Positions 155-62,203 of a stretch of 64,000 nucleotides of DNA are shown here, piece by piece. Numbering within the stretch: the stretch's first letter is position 1; each line of letters opens with the position of its first letter. Source of the stretch: Octopus sinensis. Its lineage: Eukaryota. The notes below the pieces were generated by a model. It saw nothing but the letters and a program-made list of their open reading frames with translations. It did no database searches and had not been told where the DNA came from. The translations under genes and the position numbers were made by a program. Location: NCBI RefSeq assembly GCF_006345805.1, contig NC_043008.1:47306001-47370000 (forward strand). The letters are read 5' to 3'.

Positions 155-371
155 TATTTTCTTTTCTACTCTAGGCACAGGCCCGAAATTTTGGAGGAGG
201 TGGGAGTCGATTACATCGACTCGAGTACGCAACTGGCACTTAATTTTTTGACTCTGAAAGGATGAAAAGGAAAGTCGACCTCGGCGGAATTTGAACTTAG
301 AACGTAATGACAGACGGAATATCACCAAGCATTTCGCCCGGCATGCTAACAATTCTGCCAGCTCCCCGCCT
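155..371 (-). mobile_element. tRNA-derived SINE, family A
   Basis: Reverse complement of the GGCGGCGAGCTGGCAGAATCGTTAGCA...GAGTTCAAATTCCGCCGAGGTCGACTTTGCC head seen at 10345, 27661 and 43374. Confidence 0.85.
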
Positions 372-659
372 TAGTAAATGAACGTCTATGCGAGACATCT
401 TGTTGCTCCAAATTCCATTTGTAGTTTATAGAGAGCTTTTAACTGAAATTCGTTTCCAGATGCATTATGTTCTAATTGATACCTTTAGTCCACTATGTTA
501 GGTCACCGACCCTGGGTTTGGCTGGAAGTCGAAATAAGCATCTTTTATTTATTCTGTGAGTTTAACATTTAGCTTTTCTTCCTAATGCAATATGGCTCAC
601 AAATTAAAAGATTCACTTCAGTTGTTGTTTGTATATAGAAGACCTGAACGTCGAAGAAC

Positions 660-7669: not shown

Positions 7670-10344
7670 TATGAGTAATTCTAGAATATCTTTATGCATT
7701 GAGCCTGGATAAGTACAGCCCAACCAGTAACAGAATGTAAAATGCGGACGTCGAGAGCTAGAATATATTAATGCATTAACACTGCTAAGTACAGGACAAA
7801 AAGAATAAAAAATCTTAAAAGATTGCTGCTGAAGTTAGATTTTCAAAACTAAAATACCCTTTTATACATTGTCTTTATATTTACATAAAAGTTTAAAGTA
7901 CTGAAGAATCTATTTATTTTAAATTTTAGTTAAAGATTTAATTTCCTGAATATTCCACATTAATAATTTGATATTACAAATTTATGTATTTCAAAATCAT
8001 ATAATAGCAGCTTAAGCAAAAGAGACAAAATATTATTACCAATTAGCTACATAAGACTCATTTCCATATAATGCACCCATTTTTTTCATTAGATTTTAGT
8101 TTTTAAACTATTCTTCTGACTGTAAATAGAAATGCTTCGTTACCTGATAATGCAAACTTGGAAGATATTAATCCTTTTTTTCTTTAATTTTTTTACTACT
8201 TTCTACTATTTTGAACTACATACCTTTCTACAAGAATTTAATTTTATGACATTGTCTGAGACTCAACATTTCGGAATAACGAGTTTTGATAAGAAACTAA
8301 CATTAAAAGAATAATATAAAATTAAAAATAAGATAGAAATTACTAGCTTAATATAAAGAAATTTTTTAGATAAAAATAATAACTTTCATTTTTTTTTAGA
8401 ATTCCAATAAAAAAACAAAAATTATATAAAACCTTGAAAGTGAACACTATTCGATGAACAATTTCAGAAATATATTTAACGATTTTAAAACTATTTACTT
8501 CGGATATTTTGATTTATTCAAGATCAAAGACCATACAATGTCTATTTCCATAAATTTCAGATAGACTAAATTATTCCAAAAAGAGAATTTACATCACTGA
8601 GAAGGGAAAAAGAGGTGATGCATTTCTGTTCTTTGGAGAACTCAGCTTCAAGGCAAGATTCATTTCAGTTTCCTTTTTCATTATTCTGCACAAATTCCTC
8701 TCAACATGGCACAGTACAAACCTTTTCCTTATTTAATGCTTGCATAATTTCAATTCATTAAAGTTACTTATCTGAATATATTCTCCACAATAATCACCGC
8801 TATATTTTGTATTTAATAACTAAAATGCGCCACCAAGCTATTTTCTTTGAGTGATGCTTTTCTCGTTATTTATAAATAGCGTCACTGCCTTACTTTCATA
8901 TCTATTCCTATTCCCCCTTTTTTAGAATTACGGAATATATTTTCTTGGAATATTTTCCGCTGTGAAGACATAATAAGGCAGAAATATGTCTATTATGTTC
9001 GGAATTTGAATACAATATGCATTGAATATATGATCCAGCGTTTTCGATCAGCTGACAAGGCACTAAATAACATGTTTTCTTCAGCTAACCTTTCCTCAAA
9101 CGTCACAAATTATTGATAAAAATTTATGGTAAATAGACTTTAGAAATGAAATTCAAAACATCGATATACGTTGTTGATATCTTGGTATGTTTGTTTATTT
9201 CTTCGTTTTGACCTAAAAAATCTAACCCGATTCTTCCATTCGATTCCATTCATGTCTGTTATTCTTTACGAACAATACTTTACTTTTCATTGAATGACAA
9301 AGTTGCTTCGCTGAGTGTAAAGATTTTCCCGCAATGCATGCATTAACACATGTGGCCATCCTATTATATGCGTGTGTTATGACTAGACACAATAATACAG
9401 AAATCATAAACTAAATATATAAATTATAAACTAAGTAGAGAAACATGGAGGATGCTTGGCTTTAAGCTTCAAGTGATGGTTCTTCAAAACACTGTTACAG
9501 AGAGAAATAGAAAAATGAAAGGAGAATAACTAAGAGAAATACTTATGTATATAATCGTTACTCAAATAATCTGTGTGAAATCGATTTTTATAGAGTCTGA
9601 CCTGTATACATGTGCGAGTGTATTTTATACTTATGTAAATCGACGAAAGATATTTTCAATATTCAAATTAGACGTTGAATAATCAAGAACTGGTCTAAAG
9701 TTGAGCTGACTTGAGAAAACTGACAAGTTGAATATTTTTACTTTGTATAACAGCACAAATAGAATACCAGATAGATTCAGTGCCGGAGCGGAATGAGAAA
9801 TCTAAATATTTCCCCCACGGAAACATTAACATTTAAAGTACACTAGAAATATTTAATGAATTACAGCACCAAGTCTCGTTACTAGTTTTCAGCAACAAAC
9901 TTACAAGTGTATTTACATACAATCGTATGTAAGTGAGCTTGCAGTATTGAATTGAACATTCTATTTTGGACATCAGCGCTCGATTTAGTAAATGTAAAAT
10001 CCAGGAAGATTCTAAATGCTTCCAGCAAATCTAAAACAAACATTTGAGCAATTTGTTTACAGCAAAGTAATTTGCGATCTAATTTCCGATTTAACTTATC
10101 GCTAATTTATATAATTTCTACAACGTTTTAATTATAAATATATATATTTAACATGTTGCTAGGTAATCAAAAATTTAAAACTGTAGATATAATTAGACTG
10201 CTAAAGACGAGGAATTGTTTGCGCAAATGTTGTGTATTAGATTTGACTAACATTTAAAATAACAGCTTTGCATTTGAAAGGAATTCAAAATAAGTGCAGG
10301 CAGTAAACAGACAAACGTTTATACATGCGTATATGAAAATACAT

Positions 10345-10568
10345 GAGCTGGCAGAAACGTTAGCACGCTGGGCGAAATGCGTAGCTGTATTTCATCTGTC
10401 GTCACGTTCCGAGTTCAAATTCCGCCGAGGTCGACTTTGCCTTTCATCCTTTCGGGGTCGATAAATTAAGTACCAGTTACACACTGGGGTCGATATGATC
10501 GACTTAATCCGTTTGTCTGTCCTTGTTTGTCCCGTCTGTGTTTAGCCCCTTGTGGGTAGTAAAGAAAT
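10345..10568 (+). mobile_element. SINE family A, near-intact, followed by (TA)n
   Basis: Highly similar to 43374-43599 and to the reverse complement of 27661-27891. Confidence 0.9.
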
Positions 10569-10576
10569 ATATATAT

Positions 10577-10645
<69 letters not shown>

Positions 10646-10866: not shown

Positions 10867-12326
10867 TCATTGTCATTTACTTTTAATCTGCATGTTTGAT
10901 GCAATCACCTGCCGGGGCACACCCAGCGCCCTAGGGCAAGTGAAGGTTAAGAGTTGTTGAAATATAGCTGAAAGCTTGGGGAGGGGAAGTAGAGATATAT
11001 CTCCATGTAATGCAAACACAAACATTTACATTGATAGGGTTTTTCTAAGGATGTGGGCAGTACTTGTTAGCACAATCTTTTGGATTTCCTTGAGACATGG
11101 TTTTCCAGGGATATTGTCTAGGTGTTTCTGACATCCCTTTTTTATCATACCTAGGGCACCTACAATAACAGGAACAGTTTTTGTTTTAAGATTCCACATC
11201 CTCTGTATTTCGATTTCCAGGTCCTTATATTTACTAAGTTTGTCAAATTCCTTGACAGATACATTTTTATCAGTGGGGACGCTTACTTCTATTAGTCTGC
11301 AGGTATTTTCTTCCCTGTCTTTAACAATTATGTCTGGTCGATTAGCCTTGATCGTTCTGTCAGTGTTGACTGGAAAATCCAGAGGATGGTGACATCTTTA
11401 CCTTCAACAACTGGCTGAGGATGGTGTTCATACCAGTTAGCAGGAGTGTCGGATTTGTAGTGTTTACATATCTTCCAATGTATATACTGTCCTACCCTAT
11501 CGTGGCGATTTTTGTATTCGTTTGGTGTCAGCACAGGACATCCCGAAACGAGATGGTCTATCGTTTCGTCAAATGTGTCGCAGAATCTGTATTTAGGGTC
11601 AGTACCGTTTCGGAGAACGTTAGCCTGGTAATTTCTGGTAAACAAGCTTTGATCTTGTGCTGCCATTATGAAACCTTCAGTCTCTGCTTTCAATCCAGAG
11701 CTCTTCAGCCACTGATGGGTTGTTGCTTGGTCTACATCAACATTTTGGCTTCGGAGAATATATTGTCCATGCAGGGGCTTCTGGCTCCACCGCCTCTCAA
11801 TTTGATTCTGCCCGTTCTTTTTTGCAGTCTGCTTGATTCGCTTTGCTTGCTTGGTAGCAGAGGTTTCCGGCTCTTCATCTGATTCAAGGTTAATGTCTAG
11901 TTCCCTTTCGAACTTATAAGCTTCCTTGACAATAGAATGTAGCTTTTTGCTGCTTTCGTGTTCGCACACAAGTCGCATCATCCAGTCTTTTGTACTAGAT
12001 AGGTACCTGTTCATTCCTACAGTAGAGGTCTTATAGCACAGCTCTAATTGCATCATTTCTCTCCCCCCGCTGCTTCTAGGTAGGTACAAGCGGTCTACAT
12101 CTGCCTTAGGGTGGTGCATGCTCTTGGATGTCAGTAACTTTCTTGTCTTCCTGTCCAAGCGTTGGAGTTCCGTAAGGTTCCAGTTAATGATGTTAAAACT
12201 GTACTGGACTACTGGAAGTGCCAGGGTGTTAATGGCCTGAATGCAATTTTTGGAGTTGAATTCAGTCTTCAGTACAAGCCTTATTCTCCTACAGTATTCC
12301 TTTCTTATTTTTTCCTTCATAGTAGC

Positions 12327-12327
<1 letters not shown>
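10867..12327 (-). mobile_element. 5'-truncated RLE non-LTR retrotransposon (Dong/R4-like), copy 1
   Basis: HPKADVDRLYLPRSSGGR, zinc knuckle YRFC..DETIDHLVSGC, RHDRVG, RPDIIV..LIEVSVP (RLE), KYKDLEIEIQRMW; 3' UTR ends in (TAA)n on the minus strand; (TAA)n also at the 5' junction. Confidence 0.9.
11026..12326 (-). pseudogene. C-terminal part of RLE-LINE ORF (thumb, CCHC knuckle, restriction-like endonuclease)
   Basis: ORF 11328..12533 plus a continuation after a 1-nt frameshift at ~11380 (TGGAT for TGGGAT) to a stop at 11026; first knuckle Cys replaced by Tyr. Confidence 0.85.
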
Positions 12328-12405
<78 letters not shown>

Positions 12406-12427
12406 GTTATTATTATTGTTATTATTA

Positions 12428-12496
<69 letters not shown>

Positions 12497-12503
12497 TATT
12501 ATT
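12328..12503. repeat. (AAT)n followed by (ATT)n microsatellite
   Basis: Direct reading; strand switch at ~12359. Confidence 0.95.
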
Positions 12504-12537
12504 TAAGATGCAAATATAATCACCAAAAATCACAAAG

Positions 12538-27580: not shown

Positions 27581-27660
27581 TGCGTGTCGATCTCTCTTAC
27601 TCTCTCCCACTCTCTCTATCTCTCTCTATCTATCTATCTATCTATATTTATCTCTATCTA

Positions 27661-27891
27661 TTTATTTACTACCCACAAGTGGCTAAACACAGATGGGACA
27701 AACAAGGACAGACAAACGGATTAAGTCGATTACATCGACCTCAGTGCGTAACTAGTACTTAATTTATCGACCCCGAAAGGATGAAAGGCAAAGTCGACCT
27801 CGGCGGAATTCGAACTCAGAACGTAACGGCAGACGAAATACGGCTACGCATTTCGCCCGGCGTGCTAACGTTTCTGCCAGCTCACCGCCTT
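27661..27891 (-). mobile_element. SINE family A, near-intact
   Basis: Reverse complement of the 10345-10568 element. Confidence 0.9.
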
Positions 27892-30225: not shown

Positions 30226-30431
30226 CATTTACAGAGGTTTATATATATATAAGGATATATATATAATAGTTATCGCCATACTAATATGGCATTCTTATAA
30301 AAATAAGAAAAAAGCTGTCCGCTTATTAGCTCCATGAGGCCATCGCCTTAAGTTAGCTATTTGATACACAAACTGTATCCATATAACCTTCGCACAAGGG
30401 AGGTCAGCCGCTCCACACTACTTGACCGGCA

Positions 30432-33868: not shown

Positions 33869-34150
33869 TATTAAACTTAATTTTCAAATGATGTGAATTT
33901 TGTTAGTGAACGCGTTTAAGTCGAGCCCTACGGTTACAATCTGGATTACAATCACCTATAATTCAAAATATGAAGCCATATGAAGCCAATAATTAACGCA
34001 TGAGACCGATTCCAGGATTGGATCTTCCCTGAGATTGCTTATAAATCATTCCCAGAATACCTTATGAGTCATTAGCAAAAATATTTAACACCTTATGTGT
34101 CAGATGCCCTGGTTATTAGAACATTTCTCTGGATCTATTCATAAGATATA

Positions 34151-34718
34151 CGTGGGTGAGTCAAAAAGTAATGCCATTTTGTTTAGAACAAGTATAATTA
34201 CCAACACACGGACATGTATCCTACATCAAAATGAAGCTGGTCCTATGTGGATCACTTCCCTACTTCGCAACATAGTCACAGTTTCTCTCAATAGCAATGT
34301 TCCACCTTCGAATGAGAGCATATATCCCTGCCCTGTAAAATTCTGTTGACTCTTTTCTGAGCCCCTTCTTCACTACAGTTTTCACTTCCTCGTCACTGGA
34401 ATAAGGTTTGTCTCTCAAAACCTCTTTCATGGTGCCGAAGAGATGATAGTCTGAAGGTGCTAAATTATTCCAGTGACGAGGAAGAGAAAACTGTTGCGAA
34501 GAATTGGTTCAAAGAACAGTCAGCAGAATTTTGCGGGGCAGGGATATATGCTCTCATTCGAAGATGGAACGTTATTATTGAGAGAAACAGTGACTATGTA
34601 GAAAAGTAGGGACGTGATCCAAAGAGGACCGGCTTCATTTTGATGTATGATGCATGTTCCTGTGTTGGTAATTATACCTGTCCTAAACAAAATGGCATTA
34701 CTTTTTGACTCAGCATCG
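34151..34718. mobile_element. mariner-derived MITE made of two 3' ends (~250-bp arms), TA TSD
   Basis: 34260-34463(-) LAPSDYHLFGTMKEVL...RRWNIAIERNCDYVAK*; 34466-34609(+) YSSDEEEKTVAKNWFKEQ...RRWNVIIERNSDYVEK*. Confidence 0.9.
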
Positions 34719-35793
34719 TATTTCCGATAGGCCGTCTTGAAAGAGTTATAAGTATCTTGACCATGAACACAGTTCGACGTCGGTACCAGATAGAAATGAT
34801 CGATTTTTAGACTGCCAATCCAACATATTATCGATTCGTTCAGTGGGGCCTCTAAAATATTTATTGTGGCCAGTTGCCATTCTACGAAGCTTATTGATTT
34901 TATTTTTACATTACCTGATATTATCAATTAATTGCCATTATCTTTTGTTTCGTTTATCACAAACTTCCGTTCCTTAACTCTCCCTCTCTCCCTCTCTCTC
35001 TCTCTCTCACTCTCTTTCCCTATCACTCTCTCCTCTTCCTCTTTCTTTGACACACGTCCTCTCTCTTTCCCTCTCTCTTTCCTTATCACTCTCTCCTCTT
35101 CCTCTTTCTTTGACACACACCTTCTCTCTCTCGCTCTCTCCTCCCACATTTTCTCATAATCTTTTGTCCCCTCTTCCCGTTCGCTGTTTTTCTTTTTCTA
35201 ATTTCATCTCTTACTTTACCTACATCACTTTGTCTCTATGTCTATCTGACTAACGATAACCAGCTGTCATCGTAAATACAGATAAAGTATCATGAAGCGA
35301 ATTATTATTGATTCCCCTCCTCCATTTTACTAAGCTTTCAGTCAAACAAAATATACATTTCAAAGTCACTGAATGAAAGTCCCCCCAGAACAAGTCAATA
35401 TGGCATAATGGCTTCTCTTCACCGATAAAATCTGAATATCGCCCAATATCTCATACATGTGTGTGTGTGTGTGTTGTGTGTGTGTCTGTCTGTCTGTCTG
35501 TCTGTGTGTATGTCTGTCTGTCTGTGTGGATGTGTGTGTGTGCTAGAGAGCATATATACACGTATATGCATACATGCATTATTTATATTAGTATATGTAT
35601 ATATATATATATGAATGTATGCATGTATGTATGTATGTATGCATGCATATACATATGTATATATGTATGTATACGTGTGTGGGTGTGTATAATAGCAGAG
35701 TTTGGATTATAGGATGTAGAAATGCAGTTAAGAAAAGGAGATACAGGAAATATTAACCTCACTCACACACACGAAGATAGAGAGATAGATAGG

Positions 35794-36689: not shown

Positions 36690-37100
36690 AGTGCAGGAGT
36701 GGTTGTGTGGTAAGAAACTTATCCACATGATTCTGGGTTCAGTTCCATTGCGTGGCAACTTGGGCAAGTGTTTTCTACTATTGCCTCGGGCCGACCAAAG
36801 CCTTGTGAGTGTATTTGGAAAATGGAAACTGAAAGAATCCCACCGTATGAACATATATATATATGTGTGTGTGTGCGTGTGTGTGTGTGTGTATTTGTGT
36901 GTTTGTATTAATATCCCCCACCATTGCCTGACAACCGATGTTGGTGTGTTTAAAACCCCGTATCTTCGCGGTTCGGCATGAAAGAACGATAGAATAAGTA
37001 CTAGGATTACAAAGAATAAGTGTTGGGGTTGATTTGTTCGACTACAGGAGGTGACCCAGGATGACTGCAGTCAAATGACTGAAACAAGTAAAAGAATATA
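36690..37100 (+). mobile_element. SINE family C (head, internal microsatellite, tail)
   Basis: GCAGGAGTGGTTGTGTGGTAAG...GGGTTCAGTTCCATTGCGTGGC..TTGGGCAAGTG...GCCGACCAAAGCCTTGTGAGT. Confidence 0.8.
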
Positions 37101-38434: not shown

Positions 38435-38440
<6 letters not shown>

Positions 38441-38643
38441 CAAAATAAGCAACAAGTATGTCTTCGGTAATTTGGTACGATCGTTTCATGCTACTTCATT
38501 TTATTAAACATTGTATTACATCAGTTTTAAAATGTTGAGCAATCTTCTTATTTTGATTATAATCAACCCATGGATATTTATGGATGATACCATACAAAAT
38601 TCTCGTGCCTCTGACTTAAGTACCATTTTCATTTGAATCTCTC
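38435..38643. mobile_element. rearranged copy of the 30034-30225 repeat (segment B forward, segment A reversed)
   Basis: 15-bp inverted repeat TATAATCAAAATAAG (38435-38449) / CTTATTTTGATTATA (38547-38561). Confidence 0.75.
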
Positions 38644-43373: not shown

Positions 43374-43599
43374 AGGCGGCGAGCTGGCAGAATCGTTAGC
43401 ACGCCGGACGAAATGCGTATTTCGTCTGCCGTTACGTTCTGGGTTCAAATTCCACCGAGGTCGACTTTGCCATTCATCCTTTCGGGGTCGATAAATTAAG
43501 TACCAGTTACGCACTGGGGTCGATGTAATCGTCTTAATCCGTTTGTCTATCCTTGTTTGTCCTCTCTGTGTTTAGCCCTTTGTGAGTAGTAAAGAAATA
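43374..43599 (+). mobile_element. SINE family A, young
   Basis: Near-intact head, body and tail. Confidence 0.9.
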
Positions 43600-43619
43600 T
43601 ATATTTTTTTATGAAACTT

Positions 43620-44005: not shown

Positions 44006-46054
44006 TAGTTTTATTTTTATTTTTATAGCGTGCTTTCACTTCACTACCGAGCGCAGCTCTGTGTGCCTTGGGTATGTGCTGTGATTTGTTGTGATGCTCT
44101 GATGGTTATTGTATGGAAAGTGTTCTGCGTAGGATGTGTGCAGTGCCTAGTAGTGCAATTTTCTGTATGTTATATGTGTTTGTAAGTCCTGGTGTTTTTG
44201 TTATGTATTTTTCTGAATATTTTTTTATCATGCCTAATGCACCTACTATGATAGGAATTGTTTCTGTTTTCAGATTCCACATTCTAGTTACCTCTATTTC
44301 CAGGTCTTTGTATTTTGAGAGTTTCTCCATTTCTTTTAGAGACACGTTGTCATCTGCCGGTACTGATACATCAATTAGAAAGCATTTTTTTTCTTCATGG
44401 TCTCTGACAACTATATCTGGTCTGTTGGCCTTAATTTCTCTATCTGTGTGTATCGGCATATCCCAGAGTATGGTTGCTTTCTCGTTTTCTGTGACCTTTT
44501 CTGGTGTGTGCCTATACCATCTTTTTTCTGTTGTTATTCCATAATGTTGGCATAGCTTCCAATGTATGTAAGTTCCAACTCTGTCATGTCTGTGAATATA
44601 TTCCTTCTTAGCCAAGACTGGGCAGCTAGAGATAATATGATTTATTGTTTCTTGTCCATCTCCACATATTCTGCAGTTACTTGTAATATTTCTTTTCATT
44701 ACATGTTTTTGGTAATTTCTGGTGGGGAGGCTTTGGTCTTGTGCTGCAATTAAAAATCCCTCTGTTTTGCTTTGAGTCCTGAGCTTCTCAACCATTGCTG
44801 GGATTTTTCTTTGTCTATTTCTTTTGCGTTTAGTTTAGTCCAGTATTTACCATGAAGGGGCTTTTCTTGCCATCGTTTTATCATGGTTCGTTGCTGTTCT
44901 ATTTTTAGTTTGGATTTCATTTTTTTTATAGCTTTTGTTGTTTCTTCATCTTCTTCTTCTTCTTCTTCATGTTTATTAGGTGGTATGATTTCTTGTTTGT
45001 ATTTGTCAGCTTCCTTAAATACTGAGACCAGTTTTTTGTTTTGCTCGTGTTTTGCCGCTATCTGGATCAGTTTTCCTTCCTTCTGAAGTAGATATTTTGC
45101 AGTCCTATGGTGGTTATTTTATAGTAGTTTTCCAGCTGTATAAGGCCTCTACCACCTTCTATACGTTGTATATATAGTCTTTCTATGTCAGATTTTGGGT
45201 GATGCATCCTAGATCCTGTCATTATTTTTCTTGTTTTCCTGTCTATTTTGGTCAGTTCATTTCGTGTCCAGTTAAGGATATTGTAGCTGTAACTTATAAC
45301 TGGGACAGCTAAAGTGTTGATACCTATTATCTTGTTTTTAGCATTGAGCTCTGTGTTTAGTATTGATCTAACTCGTCTATAATATTCTTTTTTTATTTTC
45401 TCTTTCATTTGTGTGTGTTGTGTCTTATCTAGTTCATGGATTCCTAAGTATTTGTAAGTTTGGCTTTGGTCTAATTCTTTTATTTCATTTGCTTCATCTA
45501 GTGTGATGTTGTTACTCTTAACTAGTTTTCCTCTTTTCATGGTTACTTTGGCGCATTTTTCTAATCCAAATTTCATATCTATTTCTTTGGTAAATCCATG
45601 AACTGTCTTTAATAGTGTTTCCAGCTGTTTGTCATTTGCAGCGTATAGTTTTAGGTCATCCATATATAAAAGGTGGCTGATCGTTTTGCCGTAACATTTA
45701 TATCCGCATCCAGTTCTATTTAGCATATCAGATAGAGGTGACAGTGCCAAGCAGAAAAGGAGTGGAGAGAGCGTATCTCCCTGGAATATTCCTCTTCTAA
45801 TGGGGATGTCTTTGGTTTTCACGAGTCCCTCTTTTGTTTGGAGGTGTAGGACTGTTTGCCATTTATTCATAGAGTGCTCTATGAATTTTATGATTGTTGG
45901 TGCTACTTTGTTAATGGCTAGTGTTTCGAGGATCCATGTGTGGGGGATGCTATCAAACGCCTTTTTGTAGTCAATCCAGGCCATACTGAGGCCTTTCTTC
46001 TTTCTGTGGCTGTCTTCAGTTATGGCTTTATTAATCATTAGTTGATCTTTACAT
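44003..46054 (-). mobile_element. 5'-truncated RLE non-LTR retrotransposon (Dong/R4-like), copy 2, inside a (TAA)n tract
   Basis: RT motifs WIDYKKAFDS, GIFQGDTLSP, LLYMDDLKL; HPKSDIERLY; CRICG..ETINHIISSC; RPDIVV..LIDVSVP; (ATT)n on both flanks. Confidence 0.95.
44106..46054 (-). pseudogene. RT-CCHC-RLE ORF remnant (~650 codons) with two 1-nt frameshifts
   Basis: ORFs 45067..46038 and 44106..44795 join through a stop-free frame; shifts at ~45096 and ~44767, both in T-runs. Confidence 0.9.
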
Positions 46055-47649: not shown

Positions 47650-47835
47650 CGGCGCGGGCATGGCAGTGTGTTAAGAAGGTTTTTTCCCAACCACATGGTT
47701 CCGAGTTCAGTCCCACTTTACGGCACCTTGATCCGGTGTCGTCTACTATAACCTGGGGCCGACCAATGCCTTGTGAGTGAATTTCGTAGAGTTGTGGAAG
47801 AAATTTGAAAGATGCCTGTCGTGTGATGTGTGTAA
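47650..47835 (+). mobile_element. SINE family C head
   Basis: CCAACCACATGGTTCCGAGTTCAGTCCCAC...GGCCGACCAATGCCTTGTGAGTG. Confidence 0.75.
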
Positions 47836-48193
47836 GTTTTGGTAAGAATGAAAATCAGTTATGTTGGGAGTATAATGCATAATTATTCATAAAATGTATT
47901 TATATGAAGAATACATATTGCTTAAGAGAAAGAAAAATATAGGGATGGAGGATTTGCGTGGAAAAGACAGATACCTATCTTAACTTAACTTAAGATGATA
48001 AGTTTATTTGTGAACGAAGTATATATTCAGGCTCACCATATCTCAGATATTTATCAGCAGAGAAGGAAAGAGCGATATAATTATAACAGGAATCATTCTC
48101 GAAGGAATTAAGAATTTGCTACAAGATAACATGAATATAATAGTTGTTGATACGACTTGAACCAGAGATACTGACACACACACACACACACAC

Positions 48194-48255
<62 letters not shown>

Positions 48256-48674
48256 AGATATCATTAACACTAATTTTTTTTTTTTAAACTATTCCACCCT
48301 TTCCAAAATGTCTGTTTCTGTGATAGAATATGTGTGTGTGTGTGTGCGTGTAAAGAAAACAGAAACGGGAGGTAATATTGATGAACAATAACTTATTTGC
48401 ATCAATTATTATTTATGAAATTATTTACGAAAAGACTGCATCCCATCTAACAGCTGTTTCTGCTGCCAATGTTCTTTAGTATTAGCATTATTATGCTAAA
48501 AAATATATTTTGTAAGCTTGGAACTTATTTCAACGTCTCTTAACACCGAAACTCTAAGTTACGAGGACGTAACCAAACCAATACCGATTGTCAAGCAGTG
48601 GTGGGAGACAAAGACACGTATACACACACATACACACAGATATATATATATATATATCTATATATATATATATA

Positions 48675-48876
48675 TATAAATACAAGAGGCTTCCAAATAG
48701 GAAGGCCTTGTGCTAGAAAGAGCAGTAGAAAACTCAAACCATCTGAAACCCAAATTTTGATGGTAAACGTTTTTAATTTTCATTCCTTTGGAGAATTTAT
48801 CCTTAATTGGTGGTTTGATTTTCTACTGCTCTTTCTAGCACAAAACTTTCCTATTTGAAAGCCTCTTGTATTTATA
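48675..48876. mobile_element. MITE with ~65-bp TIRs (Tc1/mariner-like ends)
   Basis: TATAAATACAAGAGGCTTCCAAATAGGAAGG...GTAGAAAACTCAAACC vs GGTTTGATTTTCTACTGC...GCCTCTTGTATTTATA. Confidence 0.8.
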
Positions 48877-49029
48877 AGTGAATGATATATAGTCTAATGA
48901 CTAATTCGTTTTTGTGCTAGGCCACTGGTAATAATAATTTCTTATTACCCTATTGCTACTTATTACACACACACACACATATATATATCTATATATCTAT
49001 CTATATATATATATATATATAGTATATAT

Positions 49030-49175
49030 ATACACGATGTGTTCCGATTTCCAAATCCACTTAAAAGGCTTTGGTAGGGACGATGCCATAGTTGAAGATA
49101 CTTGCCTAAGGTGCCATGCTGCGAGACTGAACCGGAAACATGTGGTTGGTAAGCAAGCTTCTTACCACACAGCCA
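49030..49175 (-). mobile_element. SINE family C head
   Basis: GAAGATACTTGCCTAAGGTGCCATGC...CATGTGGTTGGTAAGCAAGC. Confidence 0.75.
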
Positions 49176-50054
49176 ACGGTGTCGATTGTTTTGTTAGGTA
49201 GAACCGTGCTTGTTCGTGAATGCGCGATTGAACGTTTATCATTCTTCAACCTGCCTTCGAACAGCCCCTGGCACACTCATCTACCATTATTGATTATATT
49301 TTCCGCCAGTCTTGATGTGCATTGATAAACATACCAAACATTCAATGAGGTTCGCCAAACATTTTCTCTCCCCTCTTTCTCTCTCTCACTCACACATAAA
49401 TATATACATATATATACACATTACCGTGTATATATATAAATATATACGTAAATAGTTAAAATGGTGTTGATTTATGATTCGTACATTAAGAATGATAAAT
49501 ACTTTCAATCCTTTATATTCCAATCCGATCTCTCGACGGCAGACATTAAATTAATTTCTCTAAGGAATCTCTCTCCAAATAAATGTGTTAATTTGGAGGT
49601 TAGCAATTTATGAAAATGGTTTTCTTGTTAGACATGTTATACTGTCTCGCGACCAATTCTCTGACTGACAATGTTTTTAATTTGTTGTAAATCCTGAATT
49701 AAAGCATCTGGCAAAGATCTTTTTTTTTTGTTTTCTGTTTCTATTGTTCGTTCGGCCACTTTCCTCTCTCTATTCGCTTGCAATTCCCAATATAAATGCA
49801 ATGTAAAATAAGCAATACAGACACACACAGATACACACACATATATATATTCGTATGTAAATATTGACAGTTGCGCTTATGCGTTTGTGTGCGCTGCTTC
49901 TAATCTCTCTATACATATAGAGATAGCTAGATAGACAGGGAGAGCAAGAGAGAAACAGATGAACATTCATACATCTACGTGTACTAATACATACACACAC
50001 ACACACACAACACATACACACACACATATCTATATATCTATCTATATATATGTG

Positions 50055-50115
<61 letters not shown>

Positions 50116-50365
50116 CGCCGTTGCCGTTTTGTTACACTGTAATTATTGAAAACCTCCTCTGACATGTGGAATATAGGAGTCATTAATATATACATATTTT
50201 GATATTCAAGGAGTGAAACGGATAAAATCCAAGTTACATGTATTTATCGGTTAGTTAATCCTCTGACGTAAATAATCACGCGAGGTAGGTACCCAGCTTA
50301 GCCAGCCATCAGGCGAAGATTATCTTAGTCAAATGAAAGTTGCATTGTTTTTTGGAATTTCCAAG

Positions 50366-50398
<33 letters not shown>

Positions 50399-50401
<3 letters not shown>

Positions 50402-53400
50402 ACACGGATATCCAGGGGTAATACAGTGCGATCGTTTCATGCAACTTCATGTAATTGACCAATGAAATCATTACATCCATTTAAAATGTAGAGCAATCTT
50501 CAGCTGCACAAAGACATAGAGTTTAATTAAATTAGAACAGATGGACACATTAGTATAATTTTACCTAAAGTCTCCAAGAAGTTAAGGAGATAGACAAAGA
50601 ACATATTGTACCTACAACAGCATAGTGGTAACTAAAGGTTTCAAGGAGATACTGCCTGCCATTGATTTTTTTTGATTTTTGTATGGGGTCAGTTTTAATT
50701 TATAGATTAGTTTATCAAATCCTTTGTATATTTAAGGCAGAGAGAAACAGAAGGCTGTATTTATTTGGGTTAGAGTTGAGGGAGTAGACAATCATTCTAG
50801 ATGGTATAATCATAAAAATCAAGATTTATTTGAAGCAATGTCATGCGGTTTAGTAAGGGAAAGCTTAAAACAAGATGTTAGCTGAGTATTAAGGGGTTAC
50901 CCGTTAGCAGACTATTGAAAATGAAATAGGGGAAGTGTTATCATGTAGTATTATAGTTAAATACTTTAAAACAATGTTGCTATATTGTATACAGTTGAAG
51001 TTTAGGGATATGCAAAAGATTATATTAAGAAGAATATTCTAACAAAAGGATAGAAATTTATGAATAATTATGAGTATATACCAAACTTTTACCACAATAG
51101 AGGGAGGAAAAGAAGTTATATAGAAATAGTTTAATATTTATACATATTGTATACTTAAATACTAACTCATCAGATGGTATCTGTGAATATTGATTAAATG
51201 ATATTTACTGGTATTAATAAAGGAGTGTTGAGGTAAAAAAACATGCTAATTATATGTTAATAAAACCTTAATCTAAGCAGTTTTCTTATACGTAGGGAAT
51301 ATATCGGTACAGTTTTATATAAGCTAAGTATGAATTTATAGAGATACAAAACTTAGAATAATTATATAAATGAATAAATAAAGGCTAATTATAAAATAAA
51401 ATAATCAAGTAGAGCAGAACACCATAGAAAAGGAATAAAATGGCTTAATTACTAATACTATGGTAAAGTATATGTAGCTTGTTCACAAATTGAGAAGATT
51501 TTTCAGAAAAAAATATAATAATTCAAAATATGTTAGACTAAAAGTTTTATTTACTTATTTAGCTAATATCTATAAAAGACTGCTGTTTAGTATCGGCTAA
51601 AGGAATATTTAAGTTATGGAACAATCATATGTTGCACTAATCTTTTTTTAAAGACAAAGGCTTATATTATAGGTTTAAGAAGTTATTATTGTTTCTCCCT
51701 ACATGATATTTATAGTTTCTTAGTGGTACTTGTTTAGAAGGGTTATTTATATAAAGGCTCTTCTCAATACTAAGATCAGGAGGGTAGAGCCATTTAAGAA
51801 AGAGATAAATCAAGTAATTTCTAAAGATCATTTCAAACAATACTTTCATATTGTATAAAGTTAAAATTTTGGGTAATCAAGAAGATTATTAAGAATGAAA
51901 ATTTTAACAAAAGGATACCACTTCTTTGAATATTTTGGGTACAAACCAAACGTTTACCACAATAGAGGGAGGGAAAAGGAAATTGCAAAGAAATAGTTTA
52001 ATATTTATTTACTTATTACTTATCTAAATATGAACTTATTTTATGGTTTCTATGGAGATTGATCAAATCGATTTAACTGGTATTTAGTAAAGGGGAGGCA
52101 ATTGAGGTTAAAGAACATGTCAACTATATACTGATTTAATTAAAGTTGTGAAGAAACCGGTATTACCTTATATAAGCTGAGCAGAAATTAATAGGGGTAC
52201 AAAGATTAGAATTATTTAAGGCTGCTATAAAATTAACAATAACAACAATAAGATAGGGTAGAATATCATTGAAAAGCAATAAAAATAGTCTAATCACTAA
52301 AAACCCATGATAAAATAATAAAATATTCATACCATATTAACTCTAATAGCAAGTGTTTATAGAAAATGTATAATAATTGATGAGGTAAAAATTGTTAATT
52401 AACTTATTTAGTTCACTATAATCAGGGCTGAAACTCGGTATTGGTTGAAAAGTTAATTTTTGTTAAAAGGACAAGCTAACCATATATTAATATTAAATTA
52501 AGACTATTTTTATTGCTTTTCAATGATATTCTACCCTAACTTATTGTTGTTACTGCTAATTTTATAGCAGCCTTAAATAATTTTAATCTTTGTACCCCTA
52601 TTAATTTCTGCTCAGCTTATATAAGGTAATACCAGTTTCTCCACAACTTTAATTAAATCAGTATATAGTTAACATGTTCTTTAACCTCAGTTATCTCCCC
52701 TTTACTAAATACCAGTTAAATCGATTTGATCAATCTCCATAGAAACCATAAAATAAGTTCATATTTAGATAAGTAATAAGTAAATAAATATTAAACTATT
52801 TCTTTGCAATTTCCTTTTCCTCCCTCTATTGTGGTAAACGTTTGGTTTGTACCCAAAATATTCAAAGAAGTGGTATCCTTTTGTTAAAATTTTCATTCTT
52901 AATAATCTTCTTGATTACCCAAAATTTTAACTTTATACAATATGAAAGTATTGTTTGAAATGATCTTTAGAAATTACTTGATTTATCTCTTTCTTAAATG
53001 GCTCTACCCTCCTGATCTTAGTATTGACAAGGGCCTTTATATAAATAATCCTTCTAAACAAGTACCACTAAGAAACTATAAATATCATGTAGGGTGTAAC
53101 AATGATAACTTCTTAAACCTATAATATAAACCTTTGTCTTTAAAAAAAGATTAGTGCAAAATATGATTGTTCCATAACTTAAATATTCCTTTAGCCGATA
53201 CTAAACCTCAGTCTTTTATAGATATTAGCTAAATAAGTAAATAACATTTTTAGTCTAATATATTTTGAATTATTATATTTTTTCTGAAAAATCTTCTCAA
53301 TTTGTGAAAAAGCTATATATACTTTACCATAGTATTAGTAATTAAGCCATTTTATTCCTTTTCTATGGTGTTCTGCTCTACTTGATTATTTTATTTTATA

Positions 53401-54348
53401 ATTAGCCTTTATTTATTTATTTATATAATTATTCTAAGTTTTGTATCTCTATAAATTCATACTTAGCTTATATAAAACTGTACCGATATATTCCCTACGT
53501 ATAAGAAAACTGCTTAGATTAAGGTTTTATTAACATATAATTAGCATGTTCTTTTACCTCAACACTCCTTTATTAATACCAGCAAATATCATTTAATCAA
53601 TATTCACAGATACCATCTGATGAGTTAGTATTTAAGTATACAATATGTATAAATATTAAACTATTTCTATATAATTTCTTTTCCTCCCTCTATTGCGGTA
53701 AAAGTTTGGTATATACTCATAAGTATTCATAAATTTCTATCCTTTTGTTAGAATATTCTTCTTAATATAATCTTTTGCATATCCCTAAACTTCAACTGTA
53801 TACAATATAGCAACATTGTTTTAAAGTATTTAACTATAATACTACATGATAACACTTCCCCTATTTCATTTTCAATAGTCTGCTAACGGGCAACCCCTTA
53901 ATTCTCAGCTAACATCTTGTTTTAAGCTTTCCCTTACTAAACCTCATTATATTGCTCCAAATAAATCTTGATTCTTATGATTATACCATCTAGAATGTTT
54001 GTCTACTCCCTCAACTCTAGCCCAAATAAATACAGCCTTCTGTTTCTCTCAGCCTTAAATATACAAGGGATTTGATAAAAGCAGAAAACACAATGACAGG
54101 CAGAATCTGCTTGAAAACTTTAGTTACCACTATGCTGTTGTAGGTACAATATATTCTTTGTCTATCTCCTTAACTTCTTGGAGATGTTAGGTATAATTAT
54201 ACCAATGTGTCCATCTGTTCTAATTTAATTAAACTCTATGTCTTTGTGCAGCTGAAGATTGCTCTACATTTTAAATTGATGTAATGATTGCATTGTTCAT
54301 TGAAATGGAGTTGCATGAAATGATCGTACTGAATTACCTCTGGATATC
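50399..54348. repeat. 3.9-kb palindrome: arms ~50407-52291 and 52501-54348, spacer ~209 bp (foldback-like element)
   Basis: Arms are reverse complements throughout (~95% by eye, one ~35-bp indel); ORFs 51667..51849(-) and 52942..53124(+) are near-identical mirrors. Confidence 0.95.
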
Positions 54349-54464
54349 AACCTTACCACTGCAAGTAAAATTCATGAGATACTCCCTGTGTGACAGCTAT
54401 TCAGTTGAACCTGATCAGATTTCATGTTAATTACATTCGGCTAGTTTTCATAAATAGGAATATC

Positions 54465-54716
54465 ATTATTTCTAAATCTCACTAAAGGAGACTGGGGCAG
54501 CTGTGCTGGGTATTAATAGTTATCACCACATGGCAGTCCAGAAAAATAGGTTGTAATGGACACAGGTTTGTGTGTCACATAGCTAGCAAGAGGCGATGGC
54601 CTCTTGGGGCTATACAACGACTGCATTTGTCCTATTTTTCTGGACTGCCATGTTAGCTTGGTGAAAACTATTAATACCCAGTACTGCTGCCGTAGTCTCC
54701 TTTAGAGGGATTTAGA

Positions 54717-54722
<6 letters not shown>
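54465..54722. mobile_element. MITE-like hairpin with ~88-bp TIRs and 80-bp spacer
   Basis: ATTATTTCTAAATC..TAAAGGAGACT..CTGGGTATTAATAGT..CATGGCAGTCCAGAAAAATAGG mirrored at 54631-54722. Confidence 0.85.
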
Positions 54723-54777
<55 letters not shown>

Positions 54778-54845
54778 TAATAATAATAATGATAATAATA
54801 ATAACAATAACAATAATAATAACAATAATAATAATAATAATAATT
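54720..54845. repeat. (AAT)n microsatellite
   Basis: Direct reading. Confidence 0.95.

Positions 54846-61861: not shown

Positions 61862-62203
<342 letters not shown>

What the first reader, a model, noticed from the sequence alone, without database searches (positions are those of the whole stretch)
50399..54348. 3.9-kb foldback palindrome of unexplained sequence with diverged arms
Seen: arms of ~1.87 kb and a ~209-bp spacer, with no transposase and no clear TSD. By-eye identity is ~88% in the outer 90 bp, ~93% further in, and 96-98% over the inner 1.4 kb, with a ~35-bp indel. Substitution-type divergence argues against a read artefact. The spacer continues the left-arm module, so the right arm looks like a fold-back copy. 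Inference: a Foldback-type element with modular arms, or an old inverted duplication kept similar by arm-to-arm gene conversion. It could yield very long dsRNA, relevant in cephalopods given their extensive A-to-I editing.
Basis: partly seen in the sequence, partly recalled or inferred. Interest (0 to 1): 0.8.

Follow-up and report, generated by a model that had tools for sequence, protein, structure and literature searches.

The report
Old non-coding 3.9-kb inverted duplication
A real but ordinary 3.9-kb palindrome of AT-rich, non-coding animal DNA, most likely an old local inverted duplication partly kept alike by arm-to-arm gene conversion; it cannot be shown to be a transposon and has no demonstrated function.

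Summary
The arms are 50407-52291 and 52501-54348, with a 209-bp spacer. They differ by 65 substitutions in 1848 aligned sites (3.5%; 36 transitions, 29 transversions), three 1-bp indels and one 34-bp indel. Each arm reads T (558 bp, unique), R1 (611 bp), U (255 bp), R2. R1 and R2 are an older direct repeat (81% identical, period 866 bp). The spacer continues R2, so the right arm is a reversed copy of the left-hand sequence.

Divergence is 8.6% in the outer 269 bp and 2.7% further in (p = 1.6e-5). One stretch of 333 bp is identical (p = 0.002). This patchiness fits gene conversion.

There is no coding capacity: the longest ORF is 60 aa, and Pfam, Rfam and protein searches found nothing. There is no unambiguous target-site duplication and no subterminal repeats. 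The window holds no second copy apart from one 85-bp shared piece, and the public DNA scans found nothing related (one 24-nt match, judged chance).

My best reading is a local fold-back or template-switch inverted duplication ending at a (TA)15 tract (about 0.55). The main rival is a dead Foldback-like non-autonomous transposon (about 0.3). Neither the source genome nor reads were available, so copy number, transcription and cephalopod origin are untested. Interest is low.

The parts
50369..50398 (.). (TA)15 microsatellite, 8 bp outside the outer end of the left arm; the right arm has no counterpart
   Evidence: only 3.2% of window positions lie within 16 bp of the edge of a (TA)>=8 tract
50407..52291 (+). 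Left arm of the palindrome (1885 bp): T - R1 - U - first 461 bp of R2
52292..52500 (+). Asymmetric spacer (209 bp). It continues module R2 and is homologous to about 51457-51640 of R1/U
52501..54348 (-). Right arm (1848 bp): reverse complement of 50407-52291 without the 34-bp segment
50407..50676 (.). Outer zone of the left arm, 8.6% diverged from its partner 54080-54348 (23 of 269 sites)
   Evidence: Fisher p = 1.6e-5 against the inner zone (42 of 1579)
50677..50710 (+). 34-bp segment present only in the left arm; it marks the step between the more diverged outer zone and the less diverged inner zone
50407..50964 (+). Domain T: terminal 558 bp, not related to the R modules and without internal direct or inverted repeats
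50965..51575 (+). Module R1 (611 bp), an older direct repeat of R2 (447 of 553 aligned columns identical, z = 86 against shuffles)
   Evidence: (D5-D8)
51576..51830 (+). Segment U (255 bp) between R1 and R2; with R1 it makes the 866-bp period
51831..52470 (+). Module R2. It runs from the left arm through most of the spacer; the fold-back junction cuts it
51764..52097. Mismatch-free stretch between the arms, bounded by the differences at 51763 and 52098 (run of 333 sites); candidate recent conversion tract
   Evidence: permutation p = 0.0024
50407..50412 (.). Terminal GATATC hexamer (also at 54343-54348). Being self-complementary, it is either the last 6 bp of the inverted repeat or a 6-bp direct repeat flanking CAGGGG.../...CCTCTG ends
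50417..50501 (+). 85-bp subterminal piece (partner 54254-54338), about 78-80% identical to 38466-38547, which is the interior of a 119-bp MITE-like unit

Best explanation
This is a local inverted duplication of ordinary non-coding sequence, not demonstrably a mobile element. Shown: the ancestral locus read (TA)n - T - R1 - U - R2 and onward, and it already contained an old 866-bp-period direct duplication. A reversed copy of the 1.85 kb from the (TA)n edge to position 461 of R2 now sits 209 bp downstream of that point. Inferred: the copy arose in one repair or replication event. A broken or stalled 3' end near 52500 folded back on its own strand or sister strand and primed at about 52291. It copied leftwards until the hairpin-prone (TA)15 tract, then was joined to the present right flank. 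Since then both arms have decayed neutrally, to about 9% (Jukes-Cantor) at the outer edge. Intrachromosomal arm-to-arm gene conversion has repeatedly re-homogenised the interior, giving 2.7% divergence with a 333-bp identical tract. The 34-bp heterology and the arm edge limit conversion outwards. No gene, RNA family or regulatory role is indicated. If transcribed through, it would form a hairpin of about 1.8 kb, which is a generic substrate for ADAR or Dicer.
For: The spacer is homologous to the continuation of R1, so the left side is the template and the right arm the copy. No TSD was found in a scan of 51 x 51 boundary pairs, apart from the self-complementary GATATC. The outermost 100 bp is the least similar part (89%), the opposite of what functional TIR ends would show. 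Divergence is uneven: outer 8.6% against inner 2.7%, p = 1.6e-5, and the longest identical run of 333 bp has p = 0.0024. Only 4 of 65 differences touch CpG, and GC content differs little (34% against 23-33%), so mutability does not explain the step. The left boundary lies 8 bp from (TA)15, and only 3.2% of positions are that close to such a tract. The similarity between the left locus and the 38.4-kb MITE-like copy appears to run outwards past the arm boundary to the (TA)n tract, which suggests the duplication boundary cuts a pre-existing repeat. There is no coding remnant in any frame, no Rfam family and no subterminal repeats. The window holds no other copy of T, R or U, although it contains several copies of other repeat families. 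A true transposon-derived palindrome in the same window (34149-34724) still shows a TA TSD, mariner-like ends and a transposase C-terminus at 13% arm divergence. Hallmarks of that kind would therefore still be legible here if they had existed.
Against: No empty site, orthologous locus or second genome copy could be examined, so transposition is not excluded. The architecture resembles Foldback elements such as Tetris (PMC4079207): long arms, a unique terminal domain, internal direct repeats and a short non-coding middle. The GATATC hexamer could be a genuine palindromic 6-bp TSD, and under that reading the ends CAGGG/CAGAG fit the hAT-type YARNG motif (my own knowledge). The sequence right of the right arm does not continue R2, so the event was not a clean insertion without loss. 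Gene conversion is inferred from the pattern only. The apparent extension of similarity past the arm boundary is weak (about 10 of 17 bases).
Confidence: 0.55

Rival explanations
1. A dead, non-autonomous Foldback-like DNA transposon. It would have 1.85-kb terminal inverted repeats containing internal direct repeats, and it inserted here by cut-and-paste. Under this reading GATATC is a palindromic 6-bp target-site duplication and CAGGGG.../...CCTCTG are the true ends. The unequal arms reflect different amounts of the R module, as in Drosophila FB, Galileo or Tetris copies.
For: Long arms make up 95% of the element, with a unique terminal domain, internal repeats and a short non-coding middle. 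This is the layout described for Tetris, whose TIRs reach 1735 bp (PMC4079207). A perfect 6-bp direct repeat flanks symmetric CAG...CTG ends. An 85-bp subterminal piece is shared with a MITE-like unit elsewhere in the window, recalling Tetris and DAIBAM. Fold-back MITEs do occur in this genome (34149-34724).
Against: The candidate TSD cannot be told apart from the end of the inverted repeat and is shorter than the 7-10 bp of known Foldback-type families. The terminal 10 bp are not part of the piece shared with the 38.4-kb copy. The outer ends are the most diverged part. There are no short tandem subrepeats or subterminal repeats. The window has no second copy, and protein and DNA scans found none, although those collections probably lack this genome. 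A (TA)n tract is present on one side only.
Confidence: 0.3
2. Two independent copies of one dispersed repeat (for example 5'-truncated retroposon copies with a microsatellite tail) that landed head-to-head, or an inverted-copy arrangement of the Penelope type.
For: The outer ends are the common ends and the inner ends differ in length. (TA)15 abuts one outer end like a tail.
Against: The two copies would have to abut with zero spacing. The right outer end has no tail. There is no RT or endonuclease remnant. The step in divergence and the 333-bp identical tract are not expected for independent insertions. The window has no other copy.
Confidence: 0.07
3. An assembly or library artefact: a chimeric fold-back read, or a mis-join of two haplotypes in opposite orientation.
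For: Fold-back chimeras are a known artefact of long-read and amplification-based libraries (my own knowledge). No reads were available to check.
Against: The arms differ by 65 substitutions with a transition-to-transversion ratio near 1.2 and a 34-bp indel, and show only three 1-bp indels. The 209-bp spacer is asymmetric. Divergence of 3.5-8.6% is too high and too structured for read error or haplotypes. The window has no N gaps.
Confidence: 0.03

Closest known systems
Foldback-type DNA transposons (Drosophila FB, Galileo, Tetris; PMC4079207, PMC3573991)
   Same: Kilobase-long inverted arms forming nearly the whole element. A unique terminal domain is followed by internally repeated sequence. 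The middle is short and non-coding, there is no transposase, and the arms are unequal in length.
   Different: There is no unambiguous 7-10 bp TSD. The internal repeats are two 600-870-bp units at 81% identity rather than arrays of short (10-220 bp) homogeneous subrepeats. The outer termini are the least conserved part. No other family members or autonomous partner were found.
Palindromic segmental duplications maintained by arm-to-arm gene conversion (for example primate sex-chromosome palindromes; my own knowledge)
   Same: Two inverted arms around a short unique spacer. Arm identity is uneven, with identical tracts, consistent with intrachromosomal conversion that is weaker at the outer edges.
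   Different: This one is about 10 to 1000 times smaller. It is 96.5% rather than more than 99.9% identical. It carries no genes, so nothing suggests that selection maintains it.
Inverted duplications made by fold-back priming or template switching (MMBIR/FoSTeS-type events; fold-back inversions; my own knowledge)
   Same: An asymmetric spacer whose sequence continues one arm. One boundary lies at a hairpin-prone (TA)n tract. There is no TSD.
   Different: There is no accompanying direct duplication (DUP-TRP/INV-DUP pattern).
Hairpin-RNA (hpRNA) endo-siRNA loci of Drosophila (my own knowledge)
   Same: A long inverted repeat able to fold into a perfect-to-near-perfect hairpin of more than 1 kb.
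   Different: The arms show no similarity to any coding gene. Transcription and small RNAs are untested.
Mariner-derived fold-back MITE in the same window (34149-34724)
   Same: A palindrome formed from one end of a sequence copied in reverse, with a short spacer.
   Different: That element has a TA TSD, mariner-like terminal repeats and a recognisable transposase C-terminus. The 3.9-kb palindrome has none of these.

Membership tests
Foldback-type DNA transposon | Long terminal inverted repeats making up most of the element, with a short or absent non-coding middle domain | tested here: met
   Arms of 1885 and 1848 bp and a 209-bp spacer; longest ORF 60 aa
Foldback-type DNA transposon | Arrays of tandem subrepeats inside the TIRs | tested here: inconclusive
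   Only about 1.7 units of an 866-bp period at 81% identity. TRF finds no short-period array in the arms, and T has no subterminal repeats
Foldback-type DNA transposon | Target-site duplication of 7-10 bp flanking the ends | tested here: not met
   The scan of all boundary pairs within about +/-25 bp finds only the self-complementary GATATC, or GGATATC with asymmetric ends
Foldback-type DNA transposon | Multiple dispersed copies sharing the termini | not testable with these tools
   The 64-kb window has no second copy. Metagenome and viral scans found nothing, and the prokaryote-genome scan gave only a 24-nt match judged to be chance. The ORF probe against 5.8e9 proteins was negative. The source genome is not in any searchable collection
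Foldback-type DNA transposon | A related autonomous copy encoding a transposase (MULE or P superfamily) | not testable with these tools
   The six-frame Pfam scan shows no transposase remnant; the rest of the genome is unavailable
hAT-type non-autonomous element | 8-bp TSD with YARNG termini | tested here: not met
   The ends CAGGG/CAGAG fit YARNG under one reading, but the flanking 8-mers CGGATATC and GATATCAA do not match
Gene-conversion-maintained palindrome | Inverted arms with a unique spacer and a signature of arm-to-arm conversion (identity far above that expected from age, or in tracts) | tested here: inconclusive
   The structure is met. The step from 8.6% to 2.7% (p = 1.6e-5) and the 333-bp identical run (p = 0.002) fit conversion, but no outgroup or population data are available
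Gene-conversion-maintained palindrome | Arms carry functional genes | tested here: not met
   No ORF above 60 aa and no Pfam, Rfam or protein homologue
hpRNA / endo-siRNA locus | Transcribed hairpin that yields small RNAs and has sequence identity to a target gene | not testable with these tools
   Only the fold could be computed (MFE -2853.8 kcal/mol against -747 for a shuffle). No RNA data were available, and the arms resemble no coding gene

The most novel reading that the evidence does not exclude
The palindrome is a conserved, transcribed hairpin locus. It would be a long-dsRNA source feeding endo-siRNA production or acting as a major ADAR substrate or sponge in a cephalopod. Its arm identity would be kept up by selection on pairing rather than by passive gene conversion.
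Probability: 0.04. Interest if true: 0.6.

Novelty: new member of a known kind. Interest (0 to 1): 0.15.

Why it matters
It matters little on its own. Long inverted repeats of non-coding DNA are common products of repair or replication errors and of transposon decay in repeat-rich animal genomes. This one is a clean, datable small example of a palindrome with an asymmetric spacer, one boundary next to a (TA)n tract, and a divergence step at a 34-bp heterology. That makes it useful as a case study of how conversion tracts are limited in short palindromes. It is also a candidate fragile or recombinogenic site, and a hyper-edited dsRNA locus if it is transcribed. It needs to be masked or annotated so that it is not mistaken for a gene-bearing feature.

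Tried and rejected
1. Genome-wide copy search by proxy.
- An exact look-up of the 10 ORFs of at least 40 aa in or overlapping the element found none in the 15-billion-protein collection.
- A 1020-aa concatenated probe of all stop-to-stop segments of at least 33 aa found nothing among 5.8e9 proteins.
- Two conserved motifs found nothing in the metagenome contigs. The first motif also found nothing in the viral contigs.
- The prokaryote-genome scan gave one hit, a 24-nt match in an Acidobacteria MAG with no further similarity, judged to be chance.
- These negatives are weak, because the source genome seems to be absent from all these collections.

2. Identifying the organism, or an independent assembly of the locus, through neighbouring LINE ORFs.
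- The exact products are not on record.
- The best RT relative is 78% identical, on a 2.2-kb contig of NCBI assembly GCA_024449705.1.
- I could not resolve which organism that assembly belongs to.
- That contig is only 75% identical to the window at the DNA level.

3. Other checks.
- Coding remnants: the Pfam scan of all six frames, with stops masked as X, found nothing.
- RNA families: Rfam found no match in the whole window.
- Continuation of module R2 or of any arm sequence in the flanks: only low-complexity matches. No 'empty-site' paralogue of the flanks exists in the window.
- T as a degenerate third module copy: rejected (z of about 0).
- A Tc1-like 'TA|CAGTGC' motif at 50422-50429: rejected. 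It is not conserved in the right arm or in the 38.4-kb copy, and it lies inside the shared piece.
- CpG or GC mutability as the cause of the outer/inner divergence step: rejected.
- An A-to-G bias that might point to an edited, RNA-mediated copy: none (G>A 13, A>G 10, T>C 7, C>T 6).
Full report
**Observation**

The repeat finder, a local alignment and BLAST all recover one large inverted repeat. The left arm is 50407-52291 (1885 bp) and the right arm 52501-54348 (1848 bp), separated by 209 bp (52292-52500).

- Identity is 94.6% over 1885 columns with gaps.
- Counting substitutions only, 65 of 1848 aligned sites differ, or 3.5%.
- There are 36 transitions and 29 transversions, with no A>G or C>T excess. 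Only 4 differences touch a CpG.
- There are three 1-bp indels, and one 34-bp segment (50677-50710) is present only on the left.
- The window has no N.

Divergence dominated by substitutions, together with an asymmetric spacer, rules out a fold-back read artefact for practical purposes.

**Anatomy**

Each arm has four parts:

| Part | Coordinates (left arm) | Length | Notes |
|---|---|---|---|
| T | 50407-50964 | 558 bp | Unique; no internal direct or inverted repeats; not related to R (z of about 0) |
| R1 | 50965-51575 | 611 bp | Older direct repeat of R2 |
| U | 51576-51830 | 255 bp | Lies between R1 and R2 |
| R2 | 51831 onward | runs into the spacer | Cut by the fold-back junction |

R1 and R2 share 447 of 553 aligned columns (81%), with an alignment score 86 SD above shuffles and a period of 866 bp. 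A four-way alignment shows that R2 continues through the spacer to about 52470, in step with R1 and the start of U. The spacer is therefore not foreign sequence. The left side is a continuous T-R1-U-R2 stretch, and the right arm is the reverse complement of its first 1885 bp. The sequence to the right of the right arm does not continue R2, and neither flank resembles any part of the element.

**Content**

- The longest ORF is 60 aa.
- None of the ORFs is in the 15-billion-protein collection.
- A concatenated probe of all open segments found no relative among 5.8e9 proteins.
- A Pfam scan of all six frames with stops masked found nothing.
- Rfam has no match in the whole window.
- GC content is 23-34%.
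- The only other similarity inside the window is an 85-bp subterminal piece (50417-50501 and its partner 54254-54338). It is about 78-80% identical to 38466-38547. There it forms the interior of a 119-bp unit bounded by the 12-bp inverted repeat AATCAAAATAAG/CTTATTTTGATT and by TA.
- The outermost 10 bp of the arms are not part of that shared piece.

**Ends**

A scan of 51 x 51 candidate boundary pairs for flanking direct repeats returns only variants of one thing, the hexamer GATATC that ends both arms. GATATC is its own reverse complement, so two readings are possible. It is either the last 6 bp of the inverted repeat, or a perfect 6-bp target-site duplication around ends CAGGGG.../...CCTCTG.

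Either reading requires a hexamer that happens to be palindromic, so the observation does not discriminate between them. No 7-10-bp TSD of the kind reported for Foldback-type families exists here (Tetris has 8-10 bp; PMC4079207). The 8-mers needed for a hAT-type reading do not match.

The left arm starts 8 bp from a (TA)15 tract, and the right arm has no such tract. Only 3.2% of window positions lie that close to the edge of a (TA)>=8 tract.

**Divergence pattern**

- The outer 269 aligned bp differ at 8.6% and the inner 1579 bp at 2.7% (Fisher p = 1.6e-5).
- The step coincides with the 34-bp heterology.
- Inside the inner zone, a 333-bp stretch (51764-52097) has no difference at all (permutation p = 0.0024).
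- From the difference positions listed, I count about 4.3% for the inner part of T, 1.8% for R1, 3.9% for U and 2.2% for R2.
- CpG content and GC content do not explain the step.

Uniform neutral decay after a single event would not give this pattern. Arm-to-arm gene conversion that is less effective at the arm edge and beyond a heterology would give it. The outermost 100 bp are the least similar part (89%), which is the opposite of what functional transposon ends would show.

**Contrast within the window**

A second, smaller palindrome lies at 34149-34724, with 260-nt arms, 87% identity and a 60-nt spacer. Both arms translate to a peptide ending ...EFYRAGIYALIRRWNIAIERNCDYVAK*. This aligns with the last 50 residues of the SETMAR/Hsmar1 mariner transposase domain (PDB 3f2k_A, E = 0.005). 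Its ends carry mariner-like terminal sequence, and TA flanks both sides.

A genuine transposon-derived fold-back in this genome thus keeps legible hallmarks at 13% arm divergence. The 3.9-kb palindrome, at 3.5-8.6%, shows none.

**Interpretation**

The best-supported reading (about 0.55) is a local inverted duplication. A broken or stalled 3' end near 52500 folded back and primed near 52291. It copied the adjoining 1.85 kb in reverse until the hairpin-prone (TA)15 tract, and was then joined to the present right flank. The arms have since decayed, and gene conversion has partly re-homogenised the interior.

- Shown: the template-and-copy relation of the two sides, the uneven divergence, and the absence of coding capacity, of an unambiguous TSD and of other copies in the data available.
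- Inferred: the fold-back mechanism, the role of (TA)n, and gene conversion.

The main rival (about 0.3) is a dead non-autonomous Foldback-like transposon. Its architecture fits, and the GATATC repeat and the piece shared with a MITE-like unit are compatible with it. Its defining tests either failed (a TSD of 7-10 bp) or could not be run (dispersed copies, an autonomous partner). Head-to-head independent insertions (about 0.07) and an artefact (about 0.03) are unlikely.

**dsRNA and the cephalopod claim**

If transcribed end to end, the element is predicted to fold into a single hairpin. The MFE is -2853.8 kcal/mol against -747 for a shuffle. There are 1797 arm-to-arm pairs, and the longest uninterrupted helix is 241 bp. 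This is a property of any long inverted repeat. Such repeats are the usual ADAR substrates throughout Metazoa (PMC5625713, PMC9989829; I saw only their titles and abstracts, so this rests partly on my own knowledge). Transcription is untested.

The window is clearly from an animal genome:

- LINE RT fragments at 44106-46038 and 11328-12533;
- a mariner remnant;
- SINE-like repeats;
- 67 (TA)n tracts.

I could not confirm that the animal is a cephalopod. The nearest RT relative (78%) lies on a contig of assembly GCA_024449705.1, and I could not resolve which organism that is.

**Limits**

The public DNA and protein scans gave nothing related, but this says little because those collections probably lack this genome. 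The choice between local duplication and a transposon therefore rests on internal evidence only.

**Verdict**

The feature is real and accurately described. It is a new instance of a well-known kind, a long non-coding inverted repeat or palindrome, with no sign of function. Interest is low (0.15).

Noticed in passing
window 34149-34724: 580-bp palindrome (260-nt arms, 87% identical, 60-nt spacer). Both arms encode the C-terminal ~50 residues of a mariner transposase (SETMAR/Hsmar1 domain, E = 0.005). It has mariner-like ends and TA on both flanks, so it is a fold-back MITE built from two 3' ends of a mariner element.
   Followed up: partly
window 38439-38557: 119-bp MITE-like unit with a 12-bp terminal inverted repeat AATCAAAATAAG/CTTATTTTGATT. 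It is flanked by TA and abuts a (TA)n tract. Its interior is about 80% identical to the subterminal 85 bp of both arms of the big palindrome.
   Followed up: partly
window 54445-54742: Another hairpin-like inverted repeat (84-nt arms, 82% identical, 130-nt spacer) 97 bp to the right of the palindrome, followed by (AAT)43 at 54717-54844. Part of it (54548-54673) is 77% identical to 30264-30389.
   Followed up: no
window 48675-48876: Short hairpin repeat (58-nt arms, 93% identical, 86-nt spacer). It lies in a stretch (48160-50400) where (CA)n(TA)n microsatellites recur every 200-430 bp.
   Followed up: no
window 44106-46038 (-) and 11328-12533 (-): Non-LTR retrotransposon fragments: RVT_1 (E = 2.6e-22) and zf-RVT domains, plus a second ORF that looks like the C-terminal part of an RT by eye but has no Pfam hit. 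The best public relative of the RT is 78% identical, on a 2.2-kb contig of NCBI assembly GCA_024449705.1 (organism not resolved).
   Followed up: partly
window 205-372, 10344-10585, 27643-27891, 43416-43612; also 47651-47790, 49042-49175, 36700-36827, 61960-62104: Two dispersed short repeat families, with 4 copies found for each in the 64 kb. One is about 190-240 bp with a tRNA-like GTCGACCTCGGCGGAATT(T/C)GAAC motif, and the other is about 135 bp. Both are probably SINEs.
   Followed up: no
L002 4692-4715 (Acidobacteria MAG JACOSC010000300.1): A 24-nt exact match to the most conserved motif of module R (51085-51108) with no similarity beyond it. Judged to be chance, although longer than a random 20-mer hit would usually extend.
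   Followed up: partly
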